The notes under the pieces were generated by a model. It was not told where the DNA came from and did no database searches. It saw only the letters and a program-made list of their open reading frames with translations. The position numbers and the translations under genes are program-made. This document shows, piece after piece, positions 1 through 48,400 of a DNA stretch of 64,000 bases. The DNA is taken from positions 99,510,001 to 99,574,000 of the forward strand of contig OZ286463.1 of NCBI GenBank assembly GCA_965644265.1, given 5' to 3'. The first letter of the stretch is position 1. Every line of letters starts with the position of its first letter. The stretch comes from Glycera tridactyla (lineage: Eukaryota).

Positions 1-318
1 ATGTGATGAATGAGGAGAAAATGTGTGGTCAATAAGGAGAATGATCGTAGTCGATAGAAATGATGATATATGATTGATTATGTAAGTGAGTGCAATGACC
101 AGGTTAGATGTTACCTCCAAATATATTATGAAGTACAAGAATACGTTCAATGATGTGTGAATCAGCCGGTGAGAATATGTGATGAGGAAAAATGCCTTGA
201 TGGGTTGATCAGATGAGTAATGATCATATCTGAGAAATGCCCTGATTAAGTTTCAAGGTAATCAGGAACTGGGCGAATGAGCGCATTTATGGGGAATTGG
301 GGTGTTTGGGAATTAGAA

Positions 319-467
319 AGAATGCGCCGAGTGCCGTGTCCGTGGAGACCGTAAACGCCGAGTAGCGACCCCCGGGGACGCGCGAGTGGCCGGAGGCCAC
401 GAGTGCGTCCCCGGAGATCGATACGAGGCGTTTATGGACTCCACGGACACGGCACGAGGAGCATTCT
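319..467 (+). other. 149-nt imperfect palindrome (73-nt arms, 3-nt loop GGA) with three tandem G.A mismatch motifs
   Basis: Position i pairs with 786-i from 319/467 to 391/395 with no indels: 60 Watson-Crick pairs, 2 G-T wobbles and 11 mismatches (8 G.A, 2 C.A, 1 A.A). It is a GC-rich island in AT-richer flanks. Confidence 0.95.
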
Positions 468-661
468 GGACTTATCATCCGATAAATGAATAGAATAATG
501 AATCAGCTTCAATTTGGTGTTCAGATTGTGAAAATCGGACCACTGGTTGCTGAGATATGGTGATTCTTGTAGAGGTATCCTTCCTAACATCTTCCGTGAC
601 GCGATACTGATTGAACGTTCGACACGGCCAGGTGACCCTTGACCTCCATTGTTTCAATGCG

Positions 662-696
662 GTTCGGCAACGTTCGGCAGCGTTCGGCAACGTTCG
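662..696. repeat. 10-bp tandem repeat CGTTCGGCA(A/G), about 3.5 copies
   Basis: Seen directly. Confidence 0.85.
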
Positions 697-2654
697 TAGA
701 CCAACACCCCTGATCCAGTAGGCGTAAAGCACACGTGATTTTCGCTATCGAATGAAAGCACAGCAGCAAGGCGGGAGGGTAGACGGCGTGAAAATACCCA
801 CTAGACCCGTTATCGGATGATAATATGCGATCAATGGTTGGACTGATGGGAATGAGGAGTAAAGAATTAGGTAGTAGGTAGGATTATGCCGTGAATGAGG
901 AGAATAGGTGAAATAATGGGCACAGAAGATGTATGAGGATGAATGAGTAGTGGTCATCAGGAGTGGGATGAATATATCTGATGATGGATTAGAATCAGTG
1001 CAATGATGGGGGAGAAGTGTTTGATATTGATGATCCTGTATGGTGAATATATCACGGAGTACGCTCAGCCAACTTCCAGAAAAAACCAACATCTACTAAG
1101 CATCACTGATTTATATCGGACTAGTAACTGGACTAGTAGCTGGATATACTACTATTTCACCCATGAGGTGATTTATTTGTTTGGAGTTTAACGGTATGTA
1201 TCAACTTGATGTATGCCGTGTGTTCCTGGTTGATGAAAGCACGATGCGCTTTCCCTCGCAGACATCTCTCTCACAAACCCAGAACATAAGATGATTGGAT
1301 CCTGAATAGCTGTCAAGTGGAAGTAGCTACCTACCCAACATGAACAAACTGAATCTGATGATGGCATCTTCATCCATGTAACTGGCGCTGACACTCTGAC
1401 CAAATAGCGATATTTTCGTGGGGGAGGGGGCGATCATTACCGATTTGATGAAAGAAACATTCAGGTGATGGGATCCTAGCGTAGCTATATTTTCCTGACT
1501 TGGAAGGAATCAGTTGCCATAGGTGTCCAATATACGTGGTTGAATCGCCGAATAAAACCTATTCCAGAGCAAAGTGAGCGGTGATGGCCAATGATAAGGG
1601 GAGTAGTCTTGCTATTGCATGGAGGTGATAAAGGAGAAAGTTCTCCGAGAAGAGGAAAAGGAAATGAAATGAAATCAACATACCAACATCGCGTTCATTC
1701 TGATGAACCAAGGGTTATGGGTGAATGGAATGTCTCAAGTTATCATATATGGATGAAGAATAGAGAGAGAGATGGGAAGCAGACAGGCTTACAGATAGGT
1801 GGACAGAGAAAGTCAGAAGGACGAAACGACAGACAAACCGCTGGAAAGACATGTGAACAGATGCATCACTAGCAAGTCCTGTTTGATGTGTGAAATATCA
1901 AAATACATGTCTTGTCCATCACAGCCACCCTATCATTCCCGATACTCATCTTACAAATTCATTCGCCACATCTAATTCGACTTCGAAAATCTGAGATCAG
2001 AATCTTTCATCCACGAGCCGGATCAAAATGCTTGCTCGAACCTTCATCTTTAATTGAAGGGACGTATACAAGATGACTGAATTTGGAATCAATCATATTT
2101 CGTTGCATTCCCAACATTTGTGGGGGTTGAACCATTGCATTCATAGCATTTGACATTGTGATGCATTGAAGCCATAGCGTCCTTCTTATGCTGGGTGGTC
2201 GACACATATATCGTAATTTCGGCATCGATGATGGTAGTTCCAGCGGCAATAACCTCTATTGCTAAGATTCAATGCCCCATATCATAGCTGCGAGCTACTA
2301 GGGTTACTAGGACCACCAGACACTTGAACTCATCTCTTTTGATCCCGTATGTATCTCAATGAATTTGTCTGTATCTCAATATGTTCATTGTCGTTCTTCA
2401 TCCACACAAACAGCTTGGTCACGAATACCCGAAGCTATTTTGATGATACGTGTACTGAACTGACGAGATCTATGTGCATCAACTGGTATTGACACTGTGA
2501 TTTCAGTGACAGGCATCAAAAGTGGGAGTTGATATGAAAAATAAGTGACAGAGAGAGGAAGAAAGAGAGAGATGAAGAGAGACGCAGGCTGCCATGTTCA
2601 ATGTAGCTCGACGGATGATATATGAGAGTTGAAATAGGAGAGTCGCTGGTGAAA

Positions 2655-6724: not shown

Positions 6725-7065
6725 TAACCACCCACCCACTGAATTACATGCTCAAACACCCGCACACTTTCCGACTTACCCACCTAGCTACCTGCCGACC
6801 TGCCCATTTATCTACCTCTCTTCCTATTCATCCGACTGATTAGCATACTCGCCTATCTCCAACCTACCCACCTACAAACCTACCCACCTAGCGAACTAGC
6901 CATCAACCTACCTACCTACCTACCTAGCCAAGTAGTCACCTACCTTCCTATCCACCTAGCCACATACATAGGCAGCTACCTACCCACCAACCTACCAACT
7001 CACCATTCTCCCTAACTGCCAACTCAACTACCAAACTATCCGCCTACCGACATCCCTGCCTACAC
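6725..7065. repeat. Degenerate (CCTA)n tract
   Basis: CCTA/CCCA/CCAA tetramers. Confidence 0.85.
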
Positions 7066-10419: not shown

Positions 10420-11340
10420 TCCCCACTATATATCCAGGATGATCTCAATAAAGTCTGGATCATTTTTATACATCTCAGATCATCTCTGTATTGTCCGGAC
10501 TCTCTCTATACATCACAGATCATTTTTTTATTGTCCATACCTTCTCTATATGATTTTCAGATCATCTCTATATTGTCCAGACTCTCTCCATATATCCCAG
10601 ACCGTTTCTATATAGTACACACTCTCTATATATCCCAGATCATTTCTATATTGTCCACTCTCTATATATATCCCAGATCATTTCTATATTGTCCAAACTC
10701 TCTATGTATCCCAGGTCATTTCTATATTGTCCACACTCTCTGTATCTCCCAGATCATTTCTATTTTGTCCACACTCTCAATATATCCCAGATCATTTCTA
10801 TATTGTCCACACTCTCTATATATCCCAGACGAAGAAAAATAAAGAAATATCAATCTAATCAATCAATCAATCATCGCTATATTGTCCAAAGTCTTTCTAT
10901 ATATCTCAGATCATTTCTAAATTTTCCAGACTTCATTCTCATCTTTATGGTTTCCTCCGAATCATTTCTATATTGTCCACACTCTCCATATATCCCAGAT
11001 AATTTCCATATTGTCCACACTCTCTATATATCCCAAATCATCGCTATATTGTCCAAAGTCTTTCTATATATCTCAGATCATTTCTACATTGTCCAGTCTT
11101 CATTTTCATCCTTGAAATCATCGCAATATTGTTCAGATTATCACCAGAGCTGCCAGGTCATCTCAAAATACTTCGGATCATCTTTACATCGTTTAGGTCA
11201 TTGCGATATTGACCAGATTTTTTTTCATCATAGCTATGAACTCCATGTCTTTCAGGTCATTTCTAGATTATCTGAAAACAATCAATATCATCTCTATCTA
11301 GTCCCGGTCATCACCTGATCCTATTGCTCATCTCTGTACT
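10420..11340. repeat. 38-bp degenerate minisatellite (TATCCCAGATCATTTCTATATTGTCCACACTCTCTATA)
   Basis: The CCCAG(A/G) anchor recurs at 10634, 10672, 10710, 10748, 10786 and 10824 (period 38) and decays on both sides. It accounts for the long 181- and 209-aa ORFs here. Confidence 0.93.
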
Positions 11341-12367: not shown

Positions 12368-12770
12368 TAGGTTAACAGACTACTTGAATGGTAAGTGTGC
12401 AAAATGTGTTTTAGGTAGTTTGGTAGGTGGATAGGTAGCCAGCTGGGGAAGTAGGTAAGTAGATGGTCAGGTAGGTAGGTGGGTAGGTATATGGGTGGGA
12501 AGGTAGTTAGGTAGGCAGAGGGGTTGCTGGGTGGGTAGGTAGGTAGGTGGGTAGGTAGGTAGGTAGATGGATGGGTAAGTTGGTAGGTAGGCGGATAGGT
12601 AGGTATGTAGGTGGGTGAGTATGGAGGGGTCAGGTCCCCTGAGAAACTCCTCAGGTAGATACGTAGGTGGGAAGTGAATACATCGGTGGGGGAGGTGATG
12701 AGGTAGGTGACATTGGTAAGCATATAAGTAGATAATATGTGTTGGCAGATGAGTGAGTAGGATGATTCGT
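12368..12770. repeat. Degenerate (TAGG)n tract
   Basis: GGTA/GGTG/GATA tetramers. Confidence 0.85.
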
Positions 12771-15700: not shown

Positions 15701-15914
15701 AGCCAGTTTGTTGTTATATATCATATCCTCGTCACTAACCTCGGGACATTGGTTTCAGTCACTCAGACCATGACTGTTGCGGTGTTATGGGCTCAACACT
15801 GGGGACCCGGATCTGTCCAGAAAAACCACTCACCTAACGAACCACACACACGTACATCTACACAAGTGACAACCACGAGGACAACATTGATGTAATATAA
15901 CGAGCTGGACTTAC

Positions 15915-16095
15915 TTGTGTGTTAGTGGCACTTTAAGGTCAAACTCTAGGAAGGTTAATTCGACGATCTCATCCAGATCCCCGATAAAAGTATATAATAT
16001 ACAGTTCAAGTTGGAAGGATACACCTCCGGAAAATTAGGCGAGGTAAAGGTGCCGTGAGATCGGCCATAACTCTGGTACACTACACATTCACAGG
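15915..16095 (-). CDS. sol-1: Internal exon (181 nt, phase 1 to phase 2) encoding the N-terminal half of a CUB domain, SOL-1 (suppressor of lurcher protein 1)-like
   Basis: Minus strand reads ...gtttttcttgtttgtatttcag|CC TGT GAA TGT...ACA CAC AA|gtaagt, with a strong pyrimidine tract plus AG and a consensus donor. Translation xCECVVYQSYGRSHGTFTSPNFPEVYPSNLNCILYTFIGDLDEIVELTFLEFDLKVPLTH matches the CUB pattern C..G.FTSPN(Y/F)P..YP.N..C...I.L.F..FDL. The CxC start and C(I/L)LYTF..EI(V/I)E motif match my recollection of invertebrate SOL-1 CUB1. CUB identity is near certain; SOL-1 orthology is from memory. Confidence 0.85.
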
Positions 16096-16990
16096 CTGAA
16101 ATACAAACAAGAAAAACAGGAATCATTTCACTGGAGAGGCATTGTCATCACTCAGTGATATCATTCACAATCGACGACCGACCTTCAATGATACAAGAAG
16201 GGATCATCACAGAGCCCGAATCCCGTTTCATCTTGCTCACTGCATATTTCGGGCTACAGAAGTAACCAGAAACACAAAATGAACGAAAAAATTTATCTAA
16301 CACATAATGTATAAGCGAACTCTCAGTTCATTACAATGCAAATCTCCCATGAGGAAGCTCCAGAACGAAGCACACATCTTCACTCAAAATGTTTGTGGAT
16401 ACACTGTTCCACTTCAATCATTATAATTTATGGAAACGAAATTCTCCACAGCCCTATTGACGGAAGCAGCGTTCAAACGAGTACCTCCCTGAATCATCGC
16501 AAGTAATCTAATAAAGAATGTTCTGCCGACGCACACTTCAAGCCAATCCTGATATGCCAATTACAATGATACAAGGAATTGATGGCACTATCTGAATCAG
16601 ATCAACTGGGTCTCAATCTACAAGGCTGGGAAGCAATTGCTCTGTATCAGATGATATCATCATAGTAGTTTGTACTGAGCGAACGCAAGAGCCGAGTATG
16701 CTCAAGCCTCGTAGTTTCTTTCCAAAGTTGACTGTGAGAATCAAGCACTTAGGTAAATTGATAGTTGGAGTCTGGCACTTAAGCGAGTGAAAAGTGAGTT
16801 GATCACTCCATCTTTTCCAAGTAGTTATCCGGCGGGAGACCCCTGAGAGGGTTGAATAACGGACCATATCACATGACCAATTGAGTTAGCGTCTAGACAT
16901 AAGTTTTCCGTCTAAGGGTATAGCTGCATTTCCGAACCAACTATTTAACAGCAAGCATAATTTGTATATCTGGTGTGAGTTATGGTCTGT

Positions 16991-23216: not shown

Positions 23217-24179
23217 NNNNNNNNNNNNNNNNNNNNNNNNNNNNNNNNNNNNNNNNNNNNNNNNNNNNNNNNNNNNNNNNNNNNNNNNNNNNNNNNNNNN
23301 NNNNNNNNNNNNNNNNNNNNNNNNNNNNNNNNNNNNNNNNNNNNNNNNNTCTCATGCCTACTAATTGGAACATAACTCCATTGATTGCAGACAACAGGTG
23401 ATGAGTATGCCCATCTTGTCGAGAGTGGATGTCCTCCTCATTGTACCCTAACAAATGGTTCAGGCGAGGTGTCATCAACCTGTATAAACCCTCCATATAT
23501 GGCACAGTACCCTGCATTCACCGAGTAGGTCGGGTACATATGATATCCAAGCAGCTGCATCAGCTATGCACAATGTTCCGACCGAGTCGATTCGATCAGG
23601 ACATGGGAAGATATAGCCTACCCCCAAATGTGATCTCCTGTGTCAGCCCCGATTCATGTCCAGAACCAAACGAATGATGGAAATGATTCATGGGCGAACG
23701 ATTTTGGAGATTATGCATGCACATGTAATTGTCCTCTTTTTCAATTTAATTTCTCCCCTTGTATCAAGATAATCATTTAGCATGCATCTGCCAGTGTTGT
23801 GAAGCTGGTTGTGTTACAGAATGATGATTTGTGCATCATGAAAAATATAACCTGAGTCTCCAATCCGGAATAGCGAACATGGATTGAACGATAGAATTCA
23901 TCAGCCGAGTGACCCAGCAACCAGAATCGTCTTTGTCCACAGCTCAAATAAATAACCTGGCCCTGAGTGCAGTCCGCACGATGCTTGTGATAATATTTTG
24001 TATTGAAGTCATCAAACTGTCAGCCAGCACTATTTATCCTCAGGTCTAAGTGTCCATAAAGAGTGACCTTTGCAACCACACATCCCAGCCGCTATTGGTA
24101 GCAGCACCATAAGCATCTGTGATTGCTGTCCACAGACAGGCTTCCCAAGAAGCCCGATCACGGCGATTTTCGATACGCC

Positions 24180-24263: not shown

Positions 24264-24850
24264 CGGATAGAATATAAAACCTCCACATCCATCGTATAAG
24301 AGTAATCTTAAGTGTTCGAGTCGGTTTCAGTAGGGATAGAGTATTCATGTGACTGATACATTTTTCTAGTCATATGTAAGGCATACAGGATGTTAGAGAG
24401 AATAACCATAGAGCAAACATGCAAGATAATGTGTCAACTCAGGCTTCTGAATATCTCGCCGACTAAATCAAATATCGATGAGATCTTCTGCTCGCATGTA
24501 TGCTATTGATATTCAACACATGAACAACATAACTTTTTACTGGACACGATTTGCGCATGTCAATCAGCGTATATGTCACTACGAGTTGAATCTCCGGTCC
24601 CGATCTGCAATATTGCATTTGCCGTGTATCTCATCCCATGTAGATCAATTAAATGCGACAGAAATAGGCAAATGTCTATCCTGGTCCGTTCTTCCAATGG
24701 TCTTTACATTATCATGCAGATCAAAGATGATATCATGTGTTAATGCCGAAATCGTCGTCTATTTTTCTTTCGCCAAGCAACTGAGTTCGACATCATATTT
24801 CAGTATAGCTCCTTTCATTCATAAAGTATGCGGAGGATGGAGTGGTTGAT

Positions 24851-25850
24851 CTCAGCAGCTCAGTGATGTCTTAGCAGCTAAGTGATGCCTCAGCAGCTTA
24901 GTGATGTCTCAGCAGCTCAGTGATGCCTCAGCAGCTTAGTGATGTCTCAGCAGCTTAGTATTGTCTCAGCAGCTTAGTATTGTCTCAGCAGCTCAGATAT
25001 GTCTCAGCAGCTCAGTGATGTCTCAGCAGCTTAACCATGTCTCAGCAGCTCAGTGATTTCTCAGCAGGTCAGTGATGTCTCAGCAGGTCAGTGATGTCTC
25101 AGCAGCTCAGTGAAGTCTTAGCAGCTAAGTGATGCCTCAGCAGCTTATTGATGTATCAGCAGCTCAGTGATGTCTCAGCAGCTTAGTGATGTCTCAGCAG
25201 GTTAGTGATGTCTCAGGAGCTTGGTGATGCCTCAGCAGCTCAGTGATGTCTCGGCAGCTCAGTGATGTCTCAGCAGCTCAAATATGTCTCAGCAGCTAAG
25301 TGATGTCTCAGCAGCTCAAGTATGTCTCAGCACCTCAATGATGTCTCAGCAGTGATGTCCTGGCAGCTCAGTGATGTTTCAGCTGCTCAATGATGTCTCA
25401 GCAGCTCTGTGATGTACCGGCAGCTTGGTGATGTCTCAGCAGTTGGGCGATGTGTCAGCAGCTTAGGGATGTATCACCATGTCAGTGATGTCTCAGCAGT
25501 TCAGTGATGTCTCAGCAGCTCAGCGAGATTTCAGCAGCTTAGTGATGTCTCAGCAGCTCAGTGATGTCTCAGCAGCACTGTGATGTACCGGCAGCTTGGT
25601 GATGTCTCAGTAGTCGGGCGATGTGTCAGCAGCTCAGGGATGTATCACCATGTCAGTGATGTCTCAGCAGTTCAGTGATGTCTCAGCAGCTCAGCGATGT
25701 TTCAGCAGCTTAGTGATGTCTCAGGAGCTTAGTGATGTCTCAGCAGCTCAGTGATGTCTCAGCAGCTCAGCGATGTTTCAGCAGCTTAGTGATGTCTCAG
25801 CAGCTCAGTGATGTCTCAGCAACTCAGCGATGTTTTAGCAGCTCTGTTAT
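24851..25850. repeat. 19-bp minisatellite, consensus CTCAGCAGCTCAGTGATGT, about 50 copies
   Basis: Direct tandem units are readable throughout. TGA codons on both strands and a unit length not divisible by 3 indicate it is non-coding. Confidence 0.97.
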
Positions 25851-26019
25851 GTCTGTAAGCAAACGCTGAGGGAATATGTCAGACCAGGATGTGCAGGCTT
25901 GACCCGGATCCACAGAATTTGGAAATCATATCGGCCGTTCCCCTTTGGCCCACCAGACACCGTCCGCAAACGCACACCATCTATGTTCTTTGAAAAGCAT
26001 TCATCTAATCATCCCTCGG

Positions 26020-34500: not shown

Positions 34501-37500
34501 GGGTCCGTAAGAGTGATGTATGTTGGGAGAGCACATCATCTAGCCTTCATCGGCCAGAAACACTCGGCATCATAATCCTACAGGCTGTTGAACCTCAATC
34601 GAACAAAATCCAGAACCGGAAAAGACTCGCTTTTATCACATAGGATTTCCCTCACAAACACTGGCAGAATCAACGGAACTCGAGAAGAGATATTGGCGAC
34701 AATATCCAGCATAAGAAGGGTCATTCATATTTTTCACCTTGATGCATATTTCGGAAAAGATACAAAAAGGTCAGCCGCCTTGAGATTTATGGAAATCTTG
34801 CACAATACCATCGAATATATGTATTGCGGAAGAAAGCTAAATGTATGATAAGATATGCACCACCTCGATTCCTAAAACCATAGCAATAATCTAATAACCC
34901 ATCTAATTATTCTCTCAACATGACTTTGGGCGAAATATGTAAATCCAGCTTGAATTTGCTTATGGAGGCACCCATTGCGCAATGACAGCCACAAAAGGAT
35001 TCGCCCTATTCTGTATGCCACTATGTTCATCACTCCCTCATTGGGGATATGATGCATTTGCTATCGATGCCATGCTGGACGGATATCAGGTGCATTGGAT
35101 TGAATGACCCGGTTGCATGATGGCAGGGAGAGTGGGAAACGGGCTGAATGACGATGACAGTGATAATGGCAATGATAATCACAAATGATCATGAATAGTA
35201 CATCTCTATCTGGACTGCATTCTTATAAGTCTGGCCAAGAAGTGAGTACATGCTACATATTTTCGTATAGGAATATGGCGAACATCTTTTGATGATGAAT
35301 ATGTGGGGCAGAATAGTGTCAGCATTACAGAAGCTGAAATAGCTGTAGAGAAGTGTCCAATCCCTTGAGTTGTGCCTGTCACGTCATTCAACTATGTTGA
35401 TATGGAAATCCAACGAGGAAACATATTTCTGATGGCGATACTCGAACATTCTCAACTTATTTTCTGGTCCTAACTCCCAACAAAGTAAGGCGGTTTTGTT
35501 GAGACAGTGAGTGAGTCTTCCAGCATATCGATCATTCCCCTGCCGAAAAACGACTCGAATTATCACACTCTTCCTGATGTCATGAACGTCTCAGTATAGC
35601 TTACGTGATATCATGCAATTTCCAACCAACACCGAACTAATGGTCCTCATGCAGAAGTGGCCTTCATAACATGCTAGTATGCATTCTATCAGGGGGTGCA
35701 AAACTCCTCGAAGAACCAACAACTCTGCGATATTACATATTGATGACATTCAAATATTGTATTTGCGTAAAGTTGGACTGGATTGCTTGGTGATTCTGTG
35801 GAGAGCAGTGAATATTGTGATGCAGTGGAGTGAAAATAGCATGTAGTAGGCTCTAACAACAGACATTGGCAGCATCAAGAGAGCCCTACACTCCACATTT
35901 ACGACAACAAAGATATTGGGAAGTGCCGTTGACAGCAGCCATTTTGTCGCTATGATGACTCGGAAATGGAAGTTGGGCGAGTCGAGACGTGCATCGATTT
36001 CTACAGTCAGATCAGCCTTTCATAATTCATAGACAAGCGCCTGACCAACCCATTTCTCTCTCCAATCCCTTAACCTGCTATGATATAGTTTGATTATATT
36101 CCGCCTTCGTCTTTCATTGTGCATCGAAAACGCCGACGATTGTGGAAATTTCCACAGTATCTCCCAACAATACCCATATACGATAACTCATACTTCCGGA
36201 AGCTTTCTCCGAAAATCGGCCAGGGATGGTTGTTTGAGAGAGAGATAGATGTATTAGATGAGTGGACGAAGAGATAGGCAGGAACGAGAATAGCTAGCAG
36301 AAGAGTGGATCGGAGAGATATAATGAGGGGAGGGCGTGAAAATGGAAGAACTAGATATTATATCCATAAATGATGACCATTTGATGAATATCTCGAGTCT
36401 CTGATAGAATCGCAAGCACGTTGTTATCAGGTAGTCATCTTACATGCTATGCAAAATTGAACCTATAAATGTCAGGATGGGAATATACATTCCTACTCAC
36501 TGTACATTGGCGTAAAGGTACAGAGAAGACAAATATGTGGCACATGCCTGGGAATGTAACACATGGGACCACTGCTGACGTCCCATACATCAAAGTAGTA
36601 TATTCCTTGTAGAGTTGTGTAGACGATGTCAGAATTCTATGCAGACTTCATATTCATTAATCATTGTATCCACTCTAGTGAGAGATACCGATATGTCTCA
36701 TGAACAAAACTTCTCAAACCTGAATTTGAGAGGCAATGTACGTATGAAGAACTTGGCATTCATATTCGAGGACTTCCGTAGCATGGGCGGTCTTGATATC
36801 ACCAATTTAGAAATATATATCTTGGCTACTTCATCAGGAAATGTCTATCAGATTAGAATCATCAACTCCAGGACTTGTACAGAAACTAAAATGTCATATT
36901 TTGTGTTCTCAAGCTTCCAACTCTCTGAAATACCGACTTCACCACATCGATATGAGCTGCCATATAACAATCGAATATAATCCCTTTGGATTCTTTTGAA
37001 TTGATATATCGAATGAGGGAATTTTGGACAGTCTGCTTAGTCTCACGGATACAATTTCTGATATTTTGACATCTTGTTTATGGAAAAGTGTTCGAACTTG
37101 CTGTCTGGATACACATTCAAACGCATATGCATCAGCATTTCCCTTGTACGAAGACGCATCTACATATCAGCATAATCGCACANNNNNNNNNNNNNNNNNN
37201 NNNNNNNNNNNNNNNNNNNNNNNNNNNNNNNNNNNNNNNNNNNNNNNNNNNNNNNNNNNNNNNNNNNNNNNNNNNNNNNNNNNNNNNNNNNNNNNNNNNN
37301 NNNNNNNNNNNNNNNNNNNNNNNNNNNNNNNNNNNNNNNNNNNNNNNNNNNNNNNNNNNNNNNNNNNNNNNNNNNNNNNNNNNNNNNNNNNNNNNCGTGG
37401 CATACATTCAGGTGGCGCATACAGATTAGTGACTACAGAGTGGCGTGCAGTGGACCATCGCTGTATGCACAATGTATCGCTCGGCTAGGCCATTGATTTC

Positions 37501-37800: not shown

Positions 37801-40800
37801 CATTAAAATGATAATTGTGATGTCGTTCCACCGTCACCTGCCCCAGTCTCTCTTCCATTGTTCATCATGGGTATATTTGTCATTGCCTGGTACCGCTCTT
37901 GTTGGAGACGAGTATGTTTGTATCATTAATTGCATTCAGATGAGGTTCATCTCATGTGAGTACCATCCTAACACTTGTCTCATGATAACCTTTTCCAGCA
38001 AAACTAAGAGCTATTTTTCCCAGTCATCATGTCAAGGTAGCTCCGTCACTAACTGGCCATATTTATCTTTTGCTCGAAGATAAAAATGATGGAGAGAAAT
38101 CACATCAATTCTTTTAACGTGATGAATTTGAGAGGAACAGAAGTAGAAAAAATATAATGACATATTCGTTGTGAAAATATGATGATATATTTTTTATATC
38201 CCGGTTTTCTGTAAAGCCGATATTGGACAGAGGCTATACAGAAAACCGGGATATATCGAATCCTGGCTATTGAAAAGAAGTGGAATTGTAATGGTTCACT
38301 CAAGCAGTCTCCTGGGATGACAGCACTCACCACTTCCAAACTTCAGCATGTAGAATGGCCCTGACATCGGGAGTAAAGATGGTAATTGGATGGGGAATTT
38401 GACCCATATATCAGCCGCCGAAGTCGGTCTACAACTCATTCAGGACAAGTTATATACGTGGGGCTATGAGGACCCGGGTGTGGACTCCGTATCGGGAATC
38501 AATGTCACCCAGAGGAATTTATTAATCTCCTCGTTGCGACGTGTATGCATTGCCTATTCGATAGTGGATCATAGCGTCGCCAGTATACGGGTCGAATATT
38601 TTCTTGTGTAGACTATGAAAAACTCCAAACACTAGCGACTTCATGCATTGATGCACGGATACAATATTCATCGCTGTGGTTGAAATACATCCATTCCACC
38701 TATATGTCAACGCCTTGTAATCGTTGAGGGCGTCTCTCGTGAACCCCACATGGCAGCTGATCCATATCATTGAGCTGCGATCAATCAATCAATCCACTTG
38801 TGGCTCGTGGGCTTGCTGGAGACAGTGACAAAAATCAAGGGGAGATTGCCATAGTGTCCCACCCATTCAGCCACCCATACCGCCGATCAATGCTACCCTC
38901 CGTTGACTTTCTTGCATTCTGCCCGCTGTTTCGCTCAATCATTTCATTCCACCAAAGTGTTTTGATATCCATGATGAAAGACATGCTGATCAAAGCAATC
39001 ATGCTGGCTAAACTGTAATAATCTGAAACTTCGTGTGATTTTGGCGCCAATCAATATTCTTCATGGATTGTGTATCTTGATTCCCGAGCTGAAAATTTTG
39101 TTGATGACGTCTGAACAAGTTGAACTTCTCGTTAGAATCACATCATAAAGAGACCTGTTTCTGAGAAGAAACACGTCATGAGATATACTATATTCAAGTA
39201 AAAAAAAATGCAAAATATCCAACTCATTTCTGCTAGTTATGATCAGAGATTCCTCACATGTCATAATGTTTGGTCTCGGAGGAATATTTTTGAAACTCTC
39301 GAAACTCTTTTTCACTGACAATTTCTTTGTTGATGTAATTCCCATTTGAGAGATACATTGTTTCTAGAAGGAGAATTCAGGGATCGGCACAACTTCACAG
39401 CAGACTGTGTTATCGCGTGACTTTTTGGTATTGCTGGTGTAGAGTGACTCATAATTTAATTGGTTGATAATCGATAAATACAGAGCGAGTTAATTATAAC
39501 AACTATAGGAAGTCAATAGTCACGAACATGTATGGACGAAAAGTGTAGTTTTATTGACTCTATACCTACTTTCAGGGTGGAGATTATGCATATCTTAACC
39601 GCTTTTCCACTACTCAACTTATGAATAAGTGAATACCCTTCCCTGAATTCCTCGTAGTCTGATTAGTGGTTATACTAATCATTCAGAGCCATTTTCCATG
39701 CTTCTCGAACTGAATGCAAATTGTAGAACTTATCTTGACCGGCCATGCTGTCTTCAAAGTTATATATGCCATCTTGGATTAAATATAACTGATGTATATT
39801 TTGATGATTTGGGACAGCGTAGGTGAATTAATTTCCGTTGTTAAACATTCGTAAAGTGAGAGTGGTAAGACCAAACTGAAACCCATTCAAATTGGTACAG
39901 TGGATGCACAAAAACACTGCGGCATTCCCTTGAATGATATATCCTCTATAAATCAATCAATATATAAGTGAGTTACTGTTGCAGCCTGCTATTTAGTCAG
40001 ACAGTCAGACAGTGTTGTCCGTCCATCAGTTCGTCTGCCCGTCCGTCAATCACTCATACCCTCAATAAAACCATCATGGTGTGCATTCAAACAGCTATTC
40101 AGAGATCCTGAATACCCTGGAGACGGTGAGTGTTGATGCGACTGAAATCGAATATTCCAGTGAGTTCCCACAATGACCATGCAAAATTGATGTTCCTGAT
40201 GAAAGATTCAGCTAGTTCGAGCATCAACAACATGACCTATCACTATCCGCATGTGAGGATCTGACCAGTGTCACATACATACACGCTCGCCGTGACCGCC
40301 CCAGGAGATGGGTCGATCGATTCCTGCTTGTTCCATATCTGTCCCATGAATTATTGAGTCAAGGAAAGTCAGTTGGCGGTATGGATGACCTCCTGTGCCA
40401 TACTAATACATGCATCCGTATCGATGCGAATTCGGCGCGAAAATTAGCTTGAATGTCGGAAAGATGCTGAGGTCCTACCAGCAGCACTCACTCAATCACT
40501 CGATCACTCAATCAGACTGACTCAATCATTCAGTCACTCACTCTGTCTTAACCACTCACCCACAGACTCAACTGCTCCCTCTTCTCAACCTCTCATCTGA
40601 TATGAAGGAGCTCAGCTGTTTGTGATGAAGGGTTTTGGTGGAAGTTATGTGCAAGGCGGAGTCACATGGTCAGATGGATCGAGGGACGGAGGGATATATG
40701 AACATNNNNNNNNNNNNNNNNNNNNNNNNNNNNNNNNNNNNNNNNNNNNNNNNNNNNNNNNNNNNNNNNNNNNNNNNNNNNNNNNNNNNNNNNNNNNNNN

Positions 40801-41160
40801 NNNNNNNNNNNNNNNNNNNNNNNNNNNNNNNNNNNNNNNNNNNNNNNNNNNNNNNNNNATTGTGACAGATAGAGGGAGATCAGAAGACGAACAAAAAAGG
40901 AATACCTCGAAATAAAAGTCAATAATTGTTCATGTTTATAATTATCAATCACAAAGCCAACTGCGTCTGAATATATGAAACCTACATTGATCCGTAGGAA
41001 GTATGCTCAAATTGAAGTAGCAATTACCGGGAACACACTAACAACGGTGAAAGCGAATATCTAATAATAGGAATTATTGGATTCGGATCAGGAGAGTACG
41101 TGCATTGCTGAACTGTTATAGACCCACAAACATATTTGAAGTCATTAATCTTGTGCTTAC

Positions 41161-41182: not shown

Positions 41183-42542
41183 CTGGAAGTCAACAAATGC
41201 CAATGATGCGAGCGGCGGCAGTGAAGCATGGGAATTCCTCTTGTACTAACCATCAGGGGTTTTAATGAAACCAATCCAGGTAACATATACTGATGGGGAT
41301 GCTGTGTCTTATATGGAGACCACTAATAGGATGTAGGGTACGAGTCGGATAAGGTGGTGGGGAAGAGAACGGGAAGAGTAGTTGGCATTAAAGCAAAAAG
41401 ATCGTATCCTAAAGGAGCCAGGCTTCACCACAAACTGACCCTTTTGAAGCCCAGGATTCGCCATGCCAGTCGTCGCCATTGTTCTTTTATGAATGTGGTG
41501 CCGATGACCACATTTCCCAGGTCTTCTTTGAGTTCAAAATTTGGCAACTGCCATATCGCAGTCCATTTCACTTTCTCACCATTTGTCATATATCTGATGT
41601 AATCCCAATTCAAATTAACTGCTTCAAACTAGGATCATGCAGTCCACTTTTTGTCGCCACCAAAGGTTGTCTATATAGACAGGTTTGACGGTATTATTAT
41701 ATAGGCATTTGGGAGTATAGGTGTTTTCGCATGAATATTTCAATAGATTAGAAGAGAACTATATTGTGTGCTCCGGCATACGCAATGAGAGTGGCACAGC
41801 AAGCAGCTGGTGAAATTGGCGCGTTTTATCGCCTGCACTACGGGCCGAGATGCAGAGATGGCATCTAAAATGACATCGGATGGAGAGCGGTGCTCATCTG
41901 GTCTTAGCAACGTATCAGGACGCTGCACGTGTTTATCTCCACACGCAACTCAATCACCTTACTTCACTTTCCTGGCGGTCTTTCATGTTACCAGACGTAG
42001 ATATCAGCACACTTGTATGAACATCATCATTGAACGAGCCGTCAATGTGGATATCGGCTTGAGGCGATATTATAGTGTAGCTGGGAATAATGTATAAGTT
42101 GCGATGTCTGAAGAAGTTTTTGCAAAAGAAAAGTAGCTTTCCGTGAAATCCAATATGGACCTTGAGGGGTGAGATCAGTCATGATGATTTGTTATCGCGT
42201 GAGATTGTGAACAAAGGCCTGCCTTCTGAGCTGCGTTCACACGAAAGCTGGGGGCCATCGGAATNNNNNNNNNNNNNNNNNNNNNNNNNNNNNNNNNNNN
42301 NNNNNNNNNNNNNNNNNNNNNNNNNNNNNNNNNNNNNNNNNNNNNNNNNNNNNNNNNNNNNNNNNNNNNNNNNNNNNNNNNNNNNNNNNNNNNNNNGTGC
42401 TGTCATTCACGAAGAGAGAGAAAAGTCAGAATACCAGCATGAAGACAGGGAAATGCGACTGATGCGATTGATTTCGAAACATCCCTTCAAGTCGGCTGTA
42501 CTCAAGGAATTGTATTCAGTGAGTTTATTCACATATGTGTAC

Positions 42543-43672: not shown

Positions 43673-44398
43673 ATCCAACACGCTATTTCCGGTGTTTCAA
43701 CAAGATTTAACGTTTCAACACTATTCTCGAATTGAAATCCATCCTTCCATTCGAATGACAAGTGATTCAAAATCAACAAAATAGCTAGTGGCAATTCATT
43801 CTAGATACAACAATCAATGATAAAATGTTAAGCGTATGTGTCACTAGACACTCCCTGAACTCGCCATTTGCTTTCTTGATCCCTTTGCCTGAATGGGAAT
43901 GCCTAGCAGCCAGTAACCTGAGCACCACAATTGGCTCGGCAATATTTAGCTTAAAAAGAGCATCTCGAAACTTGATTCAATACAAAGAACGTGGACAGCC
44001 ATTCAGGAAGTCCCCTCTCTCATTGGTCAATGGAGAAATATCTGAATAACCAACCGATTTTAGAATTGGCATGTGCCAACATTGAATGTGAAGTTGATGA
44101 TATGTATGGTATGAATGATGACATGGGTGGCCGCGAAAGGTGGTGAAGTGGGAAATGGTGGGATTGTTGTGCCCCGTCTCGACCAACGTCCCGGGTTAAC
44201 CCGGGACTCTGCATCAGCGGCCCGGGTCAACCCGGGCCGATAGCATCGGCCTGGGTTAACCCAGGCTGCCCCGGGTTAACCCAGGCTGCACTGGGTCGAC
44301 CTGGGCTGCACTGGGTCGACCTGGGCCAATGTTACTCATGACAAAATTCATGAATCGATGATGTATGGTAACTTGATTGGGAAATACTGTTGGTGTTG

Positions 44399-44570
44399 TT
44401 CACACCTTTTCTCCAACCGTGGCTTCACACCTTTTCTCTAGCCGTGGCTTCACACCTTTCTTTAGCCGTGGCTTTACACCTTTCTCCAGCCGTGGCTTCA
44501 CACCTTTTTCAGCCATGGCTTCACACCTTTTCTCTAGCCATGGCTCCACAACTTTTTCTTTAGCCATGGC
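44399..44570. repeat. 23-26-bp minisatellite TTCACACCTTTTCTCTAGCCGTGGC, 7 copies, inside the TIR element
   Basis: Tandem units are directly readable. Confidence 0.92.
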
Positions 44571-44619
44571 TTCCATCTAACGTTACTCGCTTTCATCGGC
44601 ACATGACGACAACGGTGAC

Positions 44620-44713
<94 letters not shown>
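44620..44713. repeat. (ACGATG)n hexamer microsatellite running into a gap
   Basis: Perfect tandem repeat. Confidence 0.97.
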
Positions 44714-45042
44714 NNNNNNNNNNNNNNNNNNNNNNNNNNNNNNNNNNNNNNNNNNNNNNNNNNNNNNNNNNNNNNNNNNNNNNNNNNNNNNNNNNNNNNN
44801 NNNNNNNNNNNNNNNNNNNNNNNNNNNNNNNNNNNNNNNNNNNNNNNNNNNNNNNNNNNNNNNNNNNNNNNNNNNNNNNNNNNNNNNNNNNNNNNNNNNN
44901 NNNNNNNNNNNNNNNNNNNNNNNNNNNNNNNNNNNNNNNNNNNNNNNNNNNNNNNNNNNNNNNNNNNNNNNNNNNNNNNNNNNNNNNNNNNNNNNNNNNN
45001 NNNNNNNNNNNNNNNNNNNNNNNNNNNNNNNNNNNNNNNNNN

Positions 45043-45195
45043 GTACCTCGGTACCTCGGTACCTACGTACCTCGGTACCTACGTACCTACGTACCTACGT
45101 ACCTACGTACCTACGTACCTACGTACCTACGTACCTACGTACCTACGTACCTACGTACCTACGTACCTACGTACCTACGTACCTACGTACCTACG
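45043..45195. repeat. (GTACCTAC)n octamer microsatellite
   Basis: Perfect tandem repeat, with GTACCTCG variants at the gap edge. Confidence 0.97.
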
Positions 45196-45364
45196 TAGTG
45201 AACCTGTGAACCTACCTACCTACCTAACTACAAACCCACCAACCAACCACCTACCTGAGCGAGCGAGCGAGCGAGTGAGTGAGCGAGGGACCTCATGTGG
45301 CTGTATCGGAGGTGTGAACAACACCTCAACACATATCAACAGGATGCCCGGCTGAACGAACAGC

Positions 45365-45445
45365 TGAATGAATAGCTGGATGAATAAATGGCTGGATGAA
45401 TAAATGGCTGGATGAACGGCTGGATGAATAAATGGCTGGCTGAAT
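45365..45445. repeat. Short 16-bp tandem repeat TGGATGAATAAATGGC
   Basis: Three near-perfect copies plus truncated variants. Confidence 0.85.
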
Positions 45446-48400
45446 GGGCATCGGCCCAGGTTAACCCGGGCCGTCCCGGGTTAACCCGGGCCGCCCCGTC
45501 TCGACCACGCCATCGTGGTCGAGACGGGACACCGTCCCGGGTTAACCCGGGACGCGGCCCGGGTTAACCCGGGATGGTGGTCGAGACGGGGCACAACAGG
45601 ATCACCAATGATTATCCGAGGATGGAGTAAATTCTTTCTTCTGAATTGACCCTCACTGGATCCTGAAACATGACTCTGATTGTCTATGCAAGTATTCGCA
45701 TACAAGGTGCATCCATGGTAACAATAAACCCAATCAATTATTTGAAACACTCTACATTCAGAGATCGAATAAAACTAAATCACTGAAAGTAACTACCATC
45801 TCGTGTTACGTCACATCATGATTACACGTCTCTGAATGAAATTCAAATCTGTTCTCACCCAAAAATTAATCTATCTCACAAATGTCGTCATATCACGGAG
45901 TAGATGTCTCAGATGAAACGAGGGTCCACTTACATAATTCTCCAGGATCAAAGTGATGTCCATGTAAATACTGGCATCCGAATAGAAACGATCTCAGCAC
46001 CTCGATCTGCAGAGACGCAGGTGGCTGCAGTGAATGGTTATAGGATATCATCAGAAATATCTGCCATTCAGACTTCTTCATGCTATGATTAATTAGGTAA
46101 TCCAATATAATATCTTTTCAACAGCTGAGTCGGATTCCTTCTACGGCAATCGCTCCCACCGATTTGAGCTGATGTTCACCCCAATTATGCAGATAGATAC
46201 ATTGGCCCCTGGCTCACTCAGATCCTGATTTAATTAGGGTATCACACATGTACACTGGTATCCTACATGCACCCCATGAAATCAGTGGAATTATATTAGC
46301 CCAACACCAAGCCCCTATCCAGTAAACGTTTTCGAGTTGTCGATACCAACCATCCCTTCCAAATTGATTGAGCATTGGTTTCCTCAATAGGTGATCATTC
46401 GTACACTGATAAGCCGAGGGATTATCTATAGAAATGGGCACCTAGTCATAAAGTCGTTGAAATCAATCACTTGGTATATCAATTCCTTTTCTGGTAACTG
46501 ATGAGGCTGAAAGAGCCAAAACACGGAATCACATAGATTAGGGTCAAATCAACCGAACTCTGAAAACTAATCGGAATTACATTTGAGGAACCCTGAATGA
46601 GCGACGTGAACATGGTTACGCCGCGCCTTTCTTGTGTGACATCCTCAGCGAAGGTTGTGAACAGAAACACAATTCTGAGTGGCATCGTGGGAAAGTAAAG
46701 ACGTCATTGTCACGTCTAACAAATATATAAATGTGTATGCGAGGAACGTGACGGGCCTATCTTACCCATCGATACATCCTATTCACGATGGTTCCCTCAC
46801 AATCTCTTCCGAAATAAATAATCTTGAATCATGACAAATTCATGATCACCAGTCCTGAAGGATGTCATCGTGTTCCTAGACGTTCGCCTTTGATAAAGTG
46901 GAGAAAGAAACTCAGTCGAATCAAAGAAGATCGAAAGATTCTGGGAGGCATCTCATACGTGTGTGCCCACATCAGGCAACCAGGTTTATGCCACAAATAC
47001 TACATTTTCATGAGTATTCACAATGCATGCATATTGAATAAGAGCGACCCTGACGGGGCATCTCACCAGGCGGAGGAGCCCCGTATCAGCAGACTCCACA
47101 TTTAGTAAGAATCGGATCTTCACTGTGACATTTTCCAGGACGTAATGGATCAACTAGGTGCGCCGCCAAGAGGGGTTTCCATCGCCTCTTCATGCTAGCC
47201 ATCCGGGCAATTCCTGATCATCAATGCGGTCGACACAATAACTTTGGTGAACAGTTATTGGATAAGTTCAGGGGACTTAAATAGATGCTTGTATGCCACT
47301 CGATGTTGCTTCTTGCTGGTCGGACAAATCCAGTTTCCCTGGCATGCTGAAGCTGTCCCGGACAAAGTCAATCTCCCTTGCATTTACAAGAAAACCCTAA
47401 ACCGAAGGTGAATGGGATGAGATTGAATGATTAGAAATCTGTGGCCTTGTTGTTCAAGTCTTGTCTACATCAATAAAATCTTGGGAAAGCAAGGTCGAAA
47501 TTTAGTTGTTTGTACGGTGGCCCAGAAGTGCCATTTTGGGAAAAAAATAATCAGCACATACCATGGTCGTGAAGGTTATAGAGAGGTTTGAACATTTGCA
47601 TCAAGGTGTGAATTTCCATTTCGGTGGTGATCATTTTACACTGAAAATCAGCCAGGTAGTCCACTAGAAAATTGTGGAACGCCAAAAATGTTTCCATAGA
47701 TGTCAAGTTCAAACATTTGTGTCACCCGAGTGTACCCCTTCATCTCCCACGATGCATCCATTTCCATTCTGTGAGACCGAGACAAAGTCATTCTTTACTC
47801 CCTATGACAATGAATATCCCCCAGCCCCAGGATTCGCTATGTATCTGAACAACCAGTGCCATCATTGGGTTTGCAAGTTGTTGTGAGATTTAGATCTCTG
47901 GCACTCGGCAGATTTTACTTGATACCACCAGCTTCGGCTTCAGAAAAATAAAACCGATCAACCGCCATTTTGTGACCCTGTTAGTCAGATATTTCAGAGA
48001 ATATTCGGGGAAAAGTCGGATGGCTCTCCGTGAACGTTGTGCGAAGATTCACCTTTGAGATAGATACCCCCATAGAGCTAAAATCAGGTTGTACAAGCAG
48101 GACGGTTTTTCCAAGGTCGCAGAAGCATTAGCTAGGCATATTGAGATCTTCATGCGAAGGACATGGAAGGGCTTACTCACCCCTCCATGCTTCATAAACC
48201 TTCAGGGAGGCTTGTCGTATCAATATGGGCCTGACAAATGAGTTCATAATCTTAGCTGATATGAGAGCATCACTTAACGTTTCATGGAAATTGATATGAC
48301 CTTTGTACATCATGCACAAATGATCGTCCAATTACTGATAGTCAAACCTCCGAATTCATCTCGAATGATGAGTTTGCCTCCTGCGCATCAAATGGAAGTT

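What the first reader, a model, noticed from the sequence alone, without database searches (positions are those of the whole stretch)
319..467. 149-nt hairpin whose mismatches are patterned G.A motifs, apparently built to fold on one strand as ssDNA
Seen: 73-nt inverted arms pair without any indel around a 3-nt loop. At three symmetric positions (328-331/455-458, 359-362/424-427, 383-386/400-403) both arms read CGAG instead of CGAG/CTCG, so the fold has three 5'-CGAG-3'/3'-GAGC-5' tandem G.A internal loops. The apex is C-GGA-G. Eight of the 11 mismatches are G.A, and all 11 involve A. In duplex form, six co-oriented CGAG sites sit at spacings 31-24-17-24-31. Established: Py-GA-Pu tandem sheared G.A pairs and C(GNA)G triloops strongly stabilise DNA hairpins, and tandem GA is also stable in RNA. 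The complementary strand would carry weak TC/TC loops and a TCC apex. Inference: random decay of an inverted repeat is unlikely to give the same 2-nt swap three times, so this may be a selected, strand-specific structure. Candidates are the origin or terminus of an element with an ssDNA intermediate (HUH/rolling-circle or parvovirus-like telomere), or a structured RNA. It matches no class I can name. The GA-stabilised strand is antisense to the SOL-1-like gene, and no TSD is evident.
Basis: partly seen in the sequence, partly recalled or inferred. Interest (0 to 1): 0.8.

Follow-up and report, generated by a model that had tools for sequence, protein, structure and literature searches.

The report
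Orphan DNA hairpin with patterned G·A mismatches
A 149-base palindrome in non-coding DNA of a mollusc-like genome really does carry a non-random set of purine-purine mismatches that favour folding of one strand, but it is a single orphan copy with no relatives or linked genes, so its function is unproven.

Summary
Window 319-467 is a 73+3+73 nt palindrome with no indel and a C(GGA)G apex. It has six co-oriented CGAG and no CTCG. Of 13 non-Watson-Crick positions, 8 are G.A, 1 A.A, 2 C.A and 2 G.T.

The pattern is not random decay. All 9 transversion-type differences are purine.purine on the + strand (9:0), while the 4 transition-type differences split 2:2. In 200,000 simulated decays, 8 or more G.A occurred 15 times.

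The + strand folds better than the - strand (DNA -70.3 vs -64.3 kcal/mol; RNA -121.2 vs -116.7). That is only 4-9% of the total, and both strands form very stable hairpins.

The block is a discrete, CpG-rich (o/e 1.38) foreign insertion in a C-poor repeat. It lies about 15.5 kb downstream of, and antisense to, the one recognisable CUB exon of a SOL-1-like gene (82-84% to octopus proteins).

I found no second copy in the window, no target-site duplication and no Rep, HUH or transposase ORF. No relative turned up in viral, metagenome, prokaryote, plasmid, phage or protein collections. The source genome could not be searched.

Best reading (about 0.35): a relic of a foldback-type element shaped at the single-strand level. 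Which molecule (ssDNA or RNA) and which family remain open.

The parts
319..467 (+). Whole 149-nt palindrome. The + strand is the purine-mismatch (G.A) hairpin strand.
   Evidence: full-register hairpin, z -15 (DNA) and -17 (RNA). 66% G+C, 22 CpG, CpG o/e 1.38.
319..391 (+). Left arm, 73 nt
392..394 (+). GGA triloop closed by C391-G395 (a GNA triloop on +, TCC on the - strand)
   Evidence: Chemistry: PMC3201870, PMC13037366.
395..467 (+). Right arm, 73 nt
328..331 (+). CGAG, left half of outer tandem G.A block (partner 455-458)
455..458 (+). CGAG, right half of outer block
359..362 (+). CGAG, left half of middle block (partner 424-427)
424..427 (+). CGAG, right half of middle block
383..386 (+). 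CGAG, left half of apical block (partner 400-403)
400..403 (+). CGAG, right half of apical block
1..318 (.). Host flank: C-poor (9% C), purine-rich low-complexity DNA. The same composition resumes at 468-570 and 824-1050, so the hairpin is a discrete insertion.
15914..16144 (-). Context only: open stretch on the minus strand holding the first CUB-domain exon of a SOL-1-like (suppressor of lurcher) gene. It is the only exon recognised in the window.

Best explanation
The 149-bp block is a young, foreign, whole-length palindromic (foldback) insertion. It is most likely a solitary relic of a non-autonomous mobile element, or of the hairpin end of one. Its sequence was shaped while one strand, the window's + strand, was single-stranded.

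Shown: the two arms are in perfect register. Every transversion-type difference between them places purine opposite purine on the + strand. These are three CGAG/CGAG tandem G.A blocks, three single purine.purine oppositions and a C(GGA)G triloop.

Inferred: these marks let the + strand keep a continuous, stable 73-pair hairpin, and they do three further things.
(a) They give an otherwise symmetric palindrome a polarity. The duplex has six co-oriented CGAG sites. The two strands' hairpins differ, G.A on one and C.T on the other.
(b) They limit perfect Watson-Crick runs to 17 pairs or fewer.
(c) They offer a repeated, structurally distinctive feature that a trans-acting protein could read.

I propose the element's propagation or processing used a + strand single-stranded DNA hairpin. 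This would work the way mismatched bubbles in parvoviral telomeres, or extrahelical bases in integron attC sites, tell strands or arms apart (comparison from general knowledge, not tested here). The copy here shows no sign of being active: no partner gene and no second copy within 64 kb.
For: - Geometry and folds.
- Non-random pattern: (8 or more G.A in 15 of 200,000 simulations; P of six or more CGAG = 0.00025; purine.purine vs pyrimidine.pyrimidine 9:0).
- The 4 transition-type differences are unbiased: 2 give G.T wobbles and 2 give C.A on +. So a neutral component can be told apart from a patterned one.
- Foreign and young: a sharp compositional boundary against the 6-9% C flank. CpG o/e is 1.38 in a window at 0.54-0.94. 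Only 2 arm differences are of CpG-to-TpG type.
- The + strand is more stable in both parameter sets. Each CGAG loop is -0.7 against +1.4 kcal/mol for CTCG in RNA parameters.
- Published NMR shows CGAG blocks of G:C plus tandem sheared G:A stabilise DNA hairpins (PMC10085684). GNA triloops closed by C:G are exceptionally stable and occur at single-strand DNA initiation sites of phages and plasmids (PMC3201870, PMC13037366).
- A normal palindrome elsewhere in the window pairs CTCG with CGAG, so the window has no general peculiarity.
Against: - There is one copy only. There are no relatives in the window or in the viral, metagenome, prokaryotic, plasmid, phage or protein collections.
- No Rep, HUH, helicase or transposase ORF in 64 kb.
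- No target-site duplication or recognisable termini.
- The computed strand asymmetry is only 4-9% of the total energy. In the DNA parameter set the CGAG loops differ from CTCG loops by 0.4 kcal/mol each. Both strands would fold.
- The same pattern would also stabilise an RNA hairpin, so ssDNA is not singled out.
- With no second copy, selection cannot be shown by covariation.
- If each block began as a self-complementary tetranucleotide, one identical transversion per arm would create it. Six such events all on one strand is then only about P = 0.03.
Confidence: 0.35

Rival explanations
1. An ordinary foldback insertion with no present function: a palindromic MITE, or an inverted duplication created on insertion. 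On this reading the purine.purine pattern comes from a strand-biased, context-specific mutation process (loss of C on the + strand) plus chance. Alternatively it is a neutral peculiarity inherited from a master copy.
For: - Short whole-length palindromes in animal genomes are overwhelmingly MITE-like, for example Made1 (PMC1784062).
- The immediate flank is itself extremely C-poor with A>T and G>C on the + strand. Ten of the 13 non-Watson-Crick positions can be read as loss of a C on the + strand.
- A second MITE-like element sits 4 nt away, so the site is a repeat nest.
- Single copy, with no relatives found.
Against: - The C-poor composition stops sharply at the hairpin edges, and the hairpin keeps 30% C and 22 CpG.
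- GC skew changes sign along the window, so there is no gene-wide strand bias.
- Random C loss would rarely hit both mirrored C's of the same step three times out of three. My rough estimate is about 1e-4, from the number of GC/GC steps counted.
- A transition:transversion ratio of 4:9 is unlike neutral decay.
- No target-site duplication or superfamily termini.
Confidence: 0.3
2. A structured RNA. One option is a hairpin transcribed from the + strand, antisense to the SOL-1-like gene: a long hairpin RNA that feeds small-RNA pathways or is bound as dsRNA. The other is its pyrimidine-mismatch counterpart within the sense pre-mRNA. The tandem G.A loops would be selected at the RNA level.
For: - CGAG/CGAG is a favourable 2x2 loop in RNA parameters, -0.7 against +1.4 kcal/mol for CUCG/CUCG.
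- The + RNA folds at -121.2 kcal/mol, z -17.3.
- Mismatches keep perfect duplex runs to 17 bp or fewer.
- Palindromic MITEs are known sources of microRNA genes (PMC1784062, PMC3086885).
- Only weak hairpin-like Rfam matches were seen.
Against: - No Rfam family is near threshold (30.9 bits against a gathering score of 89).
- A 73-pair stem is about twice the length of an animal pre-miRNA.
- There are no expression data, no conservation data and no promoter evidence.
- The G.T wobbles are no more frequent than C.A mismatches on + (2:2), so there is no extra RNA-type signal.
Confidence: 0.2
3. An assembly or library artefact: a fold-back chimera or an adapter-like hairpin.
For: Palindromes can arise from fold-back reads. 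The window has seven N runs.
Against: - The arms are only 82% complementary, and the differences are patterned rather than error-like.
- The block is 149 nt with its own composition. It is flanked on both sides by the same C-poor repeat.
- No match to plasmid or phage records.
Confidence: 0.05

Closest known systems
Whole-length palindromic MITEs / foldback elements (e.g. Made1, the source of mir-548; PMC1784062)
   Same: A short (about 80-150 bp) non-coding insertion that is almost entirely two inverted arms around a tiny loop. It sits in repeat-rich non-coding DNA next to another MITE-like element.
   Different: No target-site duplication, no superfamily-type termini and no other copy seen. 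The arm differences are patterned (9:0 purine.purine, three identical CGAG blocks) rather than scattered.
Terminal hairpins (telomeres) of parvovirus-like linear ssDNA genomes, replicated by rolling-hairpin synthesis (general knowledge; no sequence was fetched or compared, by rule)
   Same: A 100-400 nt imperfect palindrome folding on a single DNA strand. Small symmetric mismatch 'bubbles' make the two orientations or arms distinguishable. It is G+C-rich. Capture of hairpin ends alone at chromosomal breaks, without a target duplication, is documented for vector ITRs (PMC7076944).
   Different: No NS1/Rep or capsid ORF anywhere in the window. The fold is a simple linear stem with no side arms. 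No flip/flop partner and no viral-contig relative. No direct comparison was made.
CGAG-block DNA hairpins (AUTS2 promoter region; PMC10085684) and GNA mini-hairpins at ssDNA initiation sites (PMC13037366, PMC3201870)
   Same: Identical local motifs. These are C:G / sheared G:A / sheared A:G / G:C blocks formed by CGAG opposite CGAG, and a d(GNA) triloop closed by C:G.
   Different: Those are short, consecutive CGAG repeats or 7-8 nt mini-hairpins. Here three isolated blocks are set 24 and 31 pairs apart in a 73-pair Watson-Crick stem.
Integron attC sites and IS200/IS605-type ends (prokaryotic ssDNA recombination substrates; general knowledge)
   Same: Imperfect palindromes in which the non-palindromic positions of the folded single strand, not the duplex sequence, carry strand identity.
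   Different: Those are prokaryotic, shorter, and use extrahelical bases or bulges. Here there are no indels, the context is eukaryotic, and a prokaryotic genome scan gave seed-only hits.

Membership tests
MITE / foldback DNA transposon | Terminal inverted repeats | tested here: met
   73-nt arms in perfect register. This is trivially met by any palindrome.
MITE / foldback DNA transposon | Target-site duplication and superfamily-type termini | tested here: not met
   Flanks read directly. No direct repeat abuts 319/467, and the ends match no canonical terminus I know.
MITE / foldback DNA transposon | Multiple dispersed copies in the genome | not testable with these tools
   There is one copy in 64 kb. 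The source genome is not searchable here.
Parvovirus-like terminal hairpin | Imperfect terminal palindrome with asymmetric bubbles that folds as ssDNA | tested here: met
   Form only.
Parvovirus-like terminal hairpin | Linked replication initiator (HUH nuclease / SF3 helicase) or capsid gene | tested here: not met
   Pfam scans of about 290 ORF pieces of 40 aa or more found only a CUB domain and one weak DUF. Masked N runs were not examined.
Parvovirus-like terminal hairpin | Flip and flop orientations; initiator-binding repeats and a nick site | not tested
There is no second copy.
Helitron / Helentron 3' end | Short (about 16-20 nt) hairpin about 10 nt upstream of a CTRR end, insertion next to T, RepHel in autonomous copies | tested here: not met
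   On the - strand, CTAA then T lies 2 nt beyond the hairpin (312-316), at about chance expectation. The hairpin is 149 nt. No RepHel was found.
Animal pre-miRNA / known RNA family | Match to a curated covariance model; stem of about 30-35 bp | tested here: not met
   Rfam at gathering threshold gave 0 hits. The best relaxed hit was 30.9 bits against a threshold of 89. The stem is 73 pairs.
Integron attC / prokaryotic ssDNA hairpin sites | Prokaryotic context, extrahelical bases, linked integrase or TnpA | tested here: not met
   The window is eukaryotic: microsatellites and a split CUB exon. There are no indels in the stem. Prokaryote hits match the seed only.

The most novel reading that the evidence does not exclude
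The hairpin represents an undescribed kind of eukaryotic hairpin element, or the captured end of an unknown ssDNA replicon. In it, evenly built CGAG sheared-G.A blocks and a GNA triloop serve as strand-identity and protein-recognition marks on a single-stranded DNA hairpin. Such ends would be invisible to protein-based searches for endogenous viral or transposon sequences.
Probability: 0.12. Interest if true: 0.8.

Novelty: new variant of a known kind. Interest (0 to 1): 0.45.

Why it matters
If the pattern is conserved in other copies, it would be a natural example of sheared G.A 'CGAG blocks' being used as functional marks in a long biological hairpin. So far these are known mainly from oligonucleotide studies and short repeats. 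It would also be a sequence-only signature for finding hairpin ends of single-stranded-DNA elements in animal genomes, where gene-based searches see nothing. If it is a lone copy with no conserved relatives, it is a curiosity: a young palindromic insertion with an odd mismatch spectrum.

Tried and rejected
- Other copies in the window: a 13-mer with 2 mismatches and blastn at word size 7 found none. Blastn of the flanks for an empty paralogous site also found none.
- Viral contigs: a 15-mer gave only single chance hits. The two-arm pattern gave one unrelated contig. The apex pattern gave none. I then stopped scanning this collection, because a hit for the parvovirus-like idea would amount to fetching an animal virus by pattern.
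- Metagenome contigs, two-arm pattern: 5 loci, none palindromic in the hairpin's way.
- Genome contigs, apex pattern: more than 120 high-G+C bacterial loci, all matching the seed only.
- Plasmid and phage blastn in distant mode: no match.
- Protein-space route to copies: the ORF that reads through the hairpin had no word-sharing candidate.
- Exact look-ups of two neighbouring ORFs and of two octopus SOL-1 proteins, to reach allelic or orthologous DNA: not on record.
- Rfam at gathering and relaxed thresholds, and a tRNA scan: nothing.
- Literature string search: one chance 13-mer in a plant-virus preprint, not followed.
- tblastn of mollusc SOL-1 proteins found only one exon, so the hairpin's intronic position is unproven.
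- Rejected: random decay, gene-wide strand bias, prokaryotic contamination, rRNA/tRNA/snRNA origin of the arms.

(i) While weighing an adapter artefact I recalled a sequencing-adapter sequence from memory in my reasoning.
(ii) The null model started each simulation from one arm, as it stands, paired with itself. That is a perfect-palindrome version held in memory in the script. Nothing of it was printed or saved, and I did not repeat or extend it.

No N run was filled or looked up.

Full report
**1. What is there**

The repeat finder reports inverted arms 319-391 and 395-467. They are 73 nt each, 82% complementary, with 3 nt between them. A base-by-base comparison shows perfect register with no indel. 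The loop is GGA at 392-394, closed by C391-G395. There are 13 positions that are not Watson-Crick: 8 G.A, 1 A.A, 2 C.A and 2 G.T.

CGAG begins at 328, 359, 383, 400, 424 and 455, so the spacings are 31-24-17-24-31. CTCG is absent. The three tandem mismatches are each CGAG opposite CGAG. Every statement of fact in the finding is therefore correct.

**2. Is it more than chance?**

- Both strands fold into the full-register hairpin, far below shuffled controls. As DNA the + strand gives -70.3 kcal/mol (z -15.3) and the - strand -64.3 (z -13.7). As RNA the values are -121.2 and -116.7.
- In 200,000 simulations of random decay to 13 arm differences, 8 or more G.A arose 15 times. Three or more self-symmetric tandem mismatches arose 180 times. 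Two or more sharing one 4-mer arose 23 times.
- Six CGAG in 149 nt compares with a shuffle mean of 1.2, P = 0.00025. The rest of the window has 153 CGAG and 133 CTCG, so there is no background bias.
- The cleanest summary separates two classes of arm difference. The four transition-type differences split evenly in their effect on the + strand, 2 G.T wobbles and 2 C.A. All nine transversion-type differences are purine.purine on the + strand and none is pyrimidine.pyrimidine. A ratio of 4 transitions to 9 transversions is itself unlike neutral decay.
- Counting the tandem pairs as single events, 6:0 still gives about P = 0.03 under the most generous model. In that model each block began as a self-complementary tetranucleotide and took one identical transversion per arm.

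**3. How asymmetric are the strands?**

The + strand is favoured in both parameter sets, but only by 6.0 of 70 kcal/mol (DNA) and 4.5 of 121 kcal/mol (RNA).

Loop by loop, CGAG/CGAG scores -0.7 against +1.4 kcal/mol for the pyrimidine version in RNA parameters. In the DNA parameter set the values are +1.3 against +1.7. That set does not encode the special stability of sheared G:A.

Published NMR shows that 'CGAG blocks' (C:G, sheared G:A, sheared A:G, G:C) stabilise DNA hairpins (PMC10085684). d(GNA) triloops closed by C:G are exceptionally stable, with GCGGAGC melting at 73 C (PMC13037366, PMC3201870). The direction of the asymmetry is therefore real. Its size in vivo is unknown, and the - strand would also fold.

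**4. Surroundings**

- Fine-scale composition shows the hairpin as a sharp block of about 30% C. Its + strand flank has 6-9% C and is purine-rich (1-318, resuming at 468-570 and 824-1050).
- The hairpin has 22 CpG and a CpG o/e of 1.38, while the window runs at 0.54-0.94. Only two arm differences are of the CpG-to-TpG kind.
- It therefore looks like a foreign and fairly recent insertion, not a fold-back copy of local DNA.
- No target-site duplication or familiar terminus abuts it.
- Four bases to its right begins a separate 352-bp block bounded by a perfect 14-nt inverted repeat (472-485 / 810-823). That block can be read as an 11-nt TIR flanked by TA. The site is a nest of small insertions.

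**5. Host and gene context**

The window is eukaryotic: microsatellites, minisatellites, seven N runs, and no tRNA or Rfam hits.

One minus-strand open stretch (15914-16144) matches the CUB domain. A full HMMER search and name look-ups place it as the first CUB of 'suppressor of lurcher protein 1-like' proteins. Identities:

| Comparator | Identity |
|---|---|
| Unnamed JGI protein | 84% |
| Two Octopus species | 82% |
| A chiton | 79% |
| The annelid Owenia | 77% |
| Haliotis | 69% |

The source is therefore a mollusc or close spiralian, possibly a cephalopod. The species is not identified.

No other exon of the gene was recognised in the window. The hairpin lies about 15.5 kb downstream of this exon, and its purine strand is antisense to the gene. 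That it is intronic is likely but not shown.

**6. Linked genes and relatives**

- Pfam scans of about 290 ORF pieces from both strands returned only the CUB exon and one weak DUF hit. There was no Rep, HUH, helicase, capsid or transposase domain.
- The hairpin has no second copy or diverged arm in the window.
- The flanks have no paralogous empty site.
- Pattern scans of viral, metagenome and prokaryotic genome collections gave only chance or seed-only matches.
- Plasmid and phage BLAST gave nothing.
- The ORF that reads through the hairpin has no relatives among predicted proteins.
- Exact look-ups meant to reach allelic or orthologous DNA failed.

None of these collections contains the source genome. 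Absence here does not establish that the element is single-copy in its host.

**7. Interpretation**

They do not support any of the named candidate systems.

I rank the readings as follows.

- **About 0.35.** A relic of a foldback-type element, or element end, shaped while the + strand was single-stranded DNA. The CGAG blocks and GNA loop would act as stable, polar marks on an otherwise symmetric palindrome.
- **About 0.30.** An ordinary palindromic insertion whose pattern comes from strand-biased loss of C plus chance or inheritance, without function. The C-poor flank and the fact that 10 of 13 positions can be read as C loss on + speak for this. Against it are the sharp compositional boundary, the changing skew along the window, and the three-out-of-three mirrored hits.
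- **About 0.20.** A structured RNA, for which the same loops are favourable.
- **About 0.05.** An artefact, made unlikely by 82% arms with patterned differences.

A normal palindrome elsewhere in the window (45495-45531) pairs CTCG with CGAG. This shows what the hairpin would look like without the peculiarity.

**8. Limits and rule-bound omissions**

- I did not fetch or compare terminal hairpins of animal parvoviruses. After three scans I stopped scanning the viral collection for that reason.
- I built no repaired, consensus or ancestral version of the hairpin. The null model did pair each arm, as it stands, with itself inside a script, with nothing printed or saved. I declare that as a possible slip.
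- I also declare having recalled an adapter sequence from memory in my reasoning.
- N runs were left untouched.

**9. Verdict**

This is a real, statistically unusual and chemically coherent feature, with a plausible single-strand logic. It is known from one copy only, with no relatives, no partner gene and no expression or structure data. The case is interesting enough to justify a genome-wide copy search. It is not yet evidence for a new class of element.

Noticed in passing
window 472-823: A second small insertion starts 4 nt after the hairpin. It has a perfect 14-nt inverted repeat (472-485 / 810-823), readable as an 11-nt TIR flanked by TA on each side (Tc1/mariner-style MITE?). It encloses a C-normal, CpG-rich core with a 10-nt unit repeated three times (662-696).
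   Followed up: partly
window 1-318, 468-570, 824-1050: A strongly strand-asymmetric, C-poor (6-14% C), purine-rich low-complexity domain on the + strand, interrupted by the two C-normal insertions. Its origin is unknown (an old repeat, or a strand-specific mutation process).
   Followed up: partly
window 44156-45607: A TIR-bounded element with 50-nt ends, 88% complementary. It is packed with CCCGGGTTAACCCGGG palindromes and several tandem arrays (25-mer x7, GACGAT x16, GTACCTAC x19), plus a masked N run (44714-45042). It contains an ordinary 15-bp hairpin at about 45495-45531 that pairs CTCG with CGAG.
   Followed up: partly
window 312-316 (- strand): Reading the - strand, CTAA followed by T lies 2 nt beyond the hairpin end. 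This resembles a Helitron CTRR end. It is about what chance gives and the hairpin is far too long for that family.
   Followed up: partly
window 24850-25854: A minisatellite of a 19-nt unit, about 53 copies, 81% matches.
   Followed up: no
window 10467-11095: A 38-nt tandem repeat (about 9 + 3.5 copies) that generates the longest apparent ORFs of the window (181-254 aa). These are repeat artefacts, not genes.
   Followed up: no
window 23217-23349, 37183-37395, 42265-42396, 44714-45042, 49633-49794, 61443-61736: Most ORFs of 120 aa or more in the ORF list run across N runs and exist only because N codons are not stops. A seventh N run lies at 40706-40858. The N runs were left as they are.
   Followed up: no
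window 6859-7051 and 12420-12626: Two low-complexity (TAGG/CCTA-type) arrays about 5.5 kb apart in inverted orientation, 140 nt at 71% complementarity. They may be the ends of a larger repeat unit.
   Followed up: no
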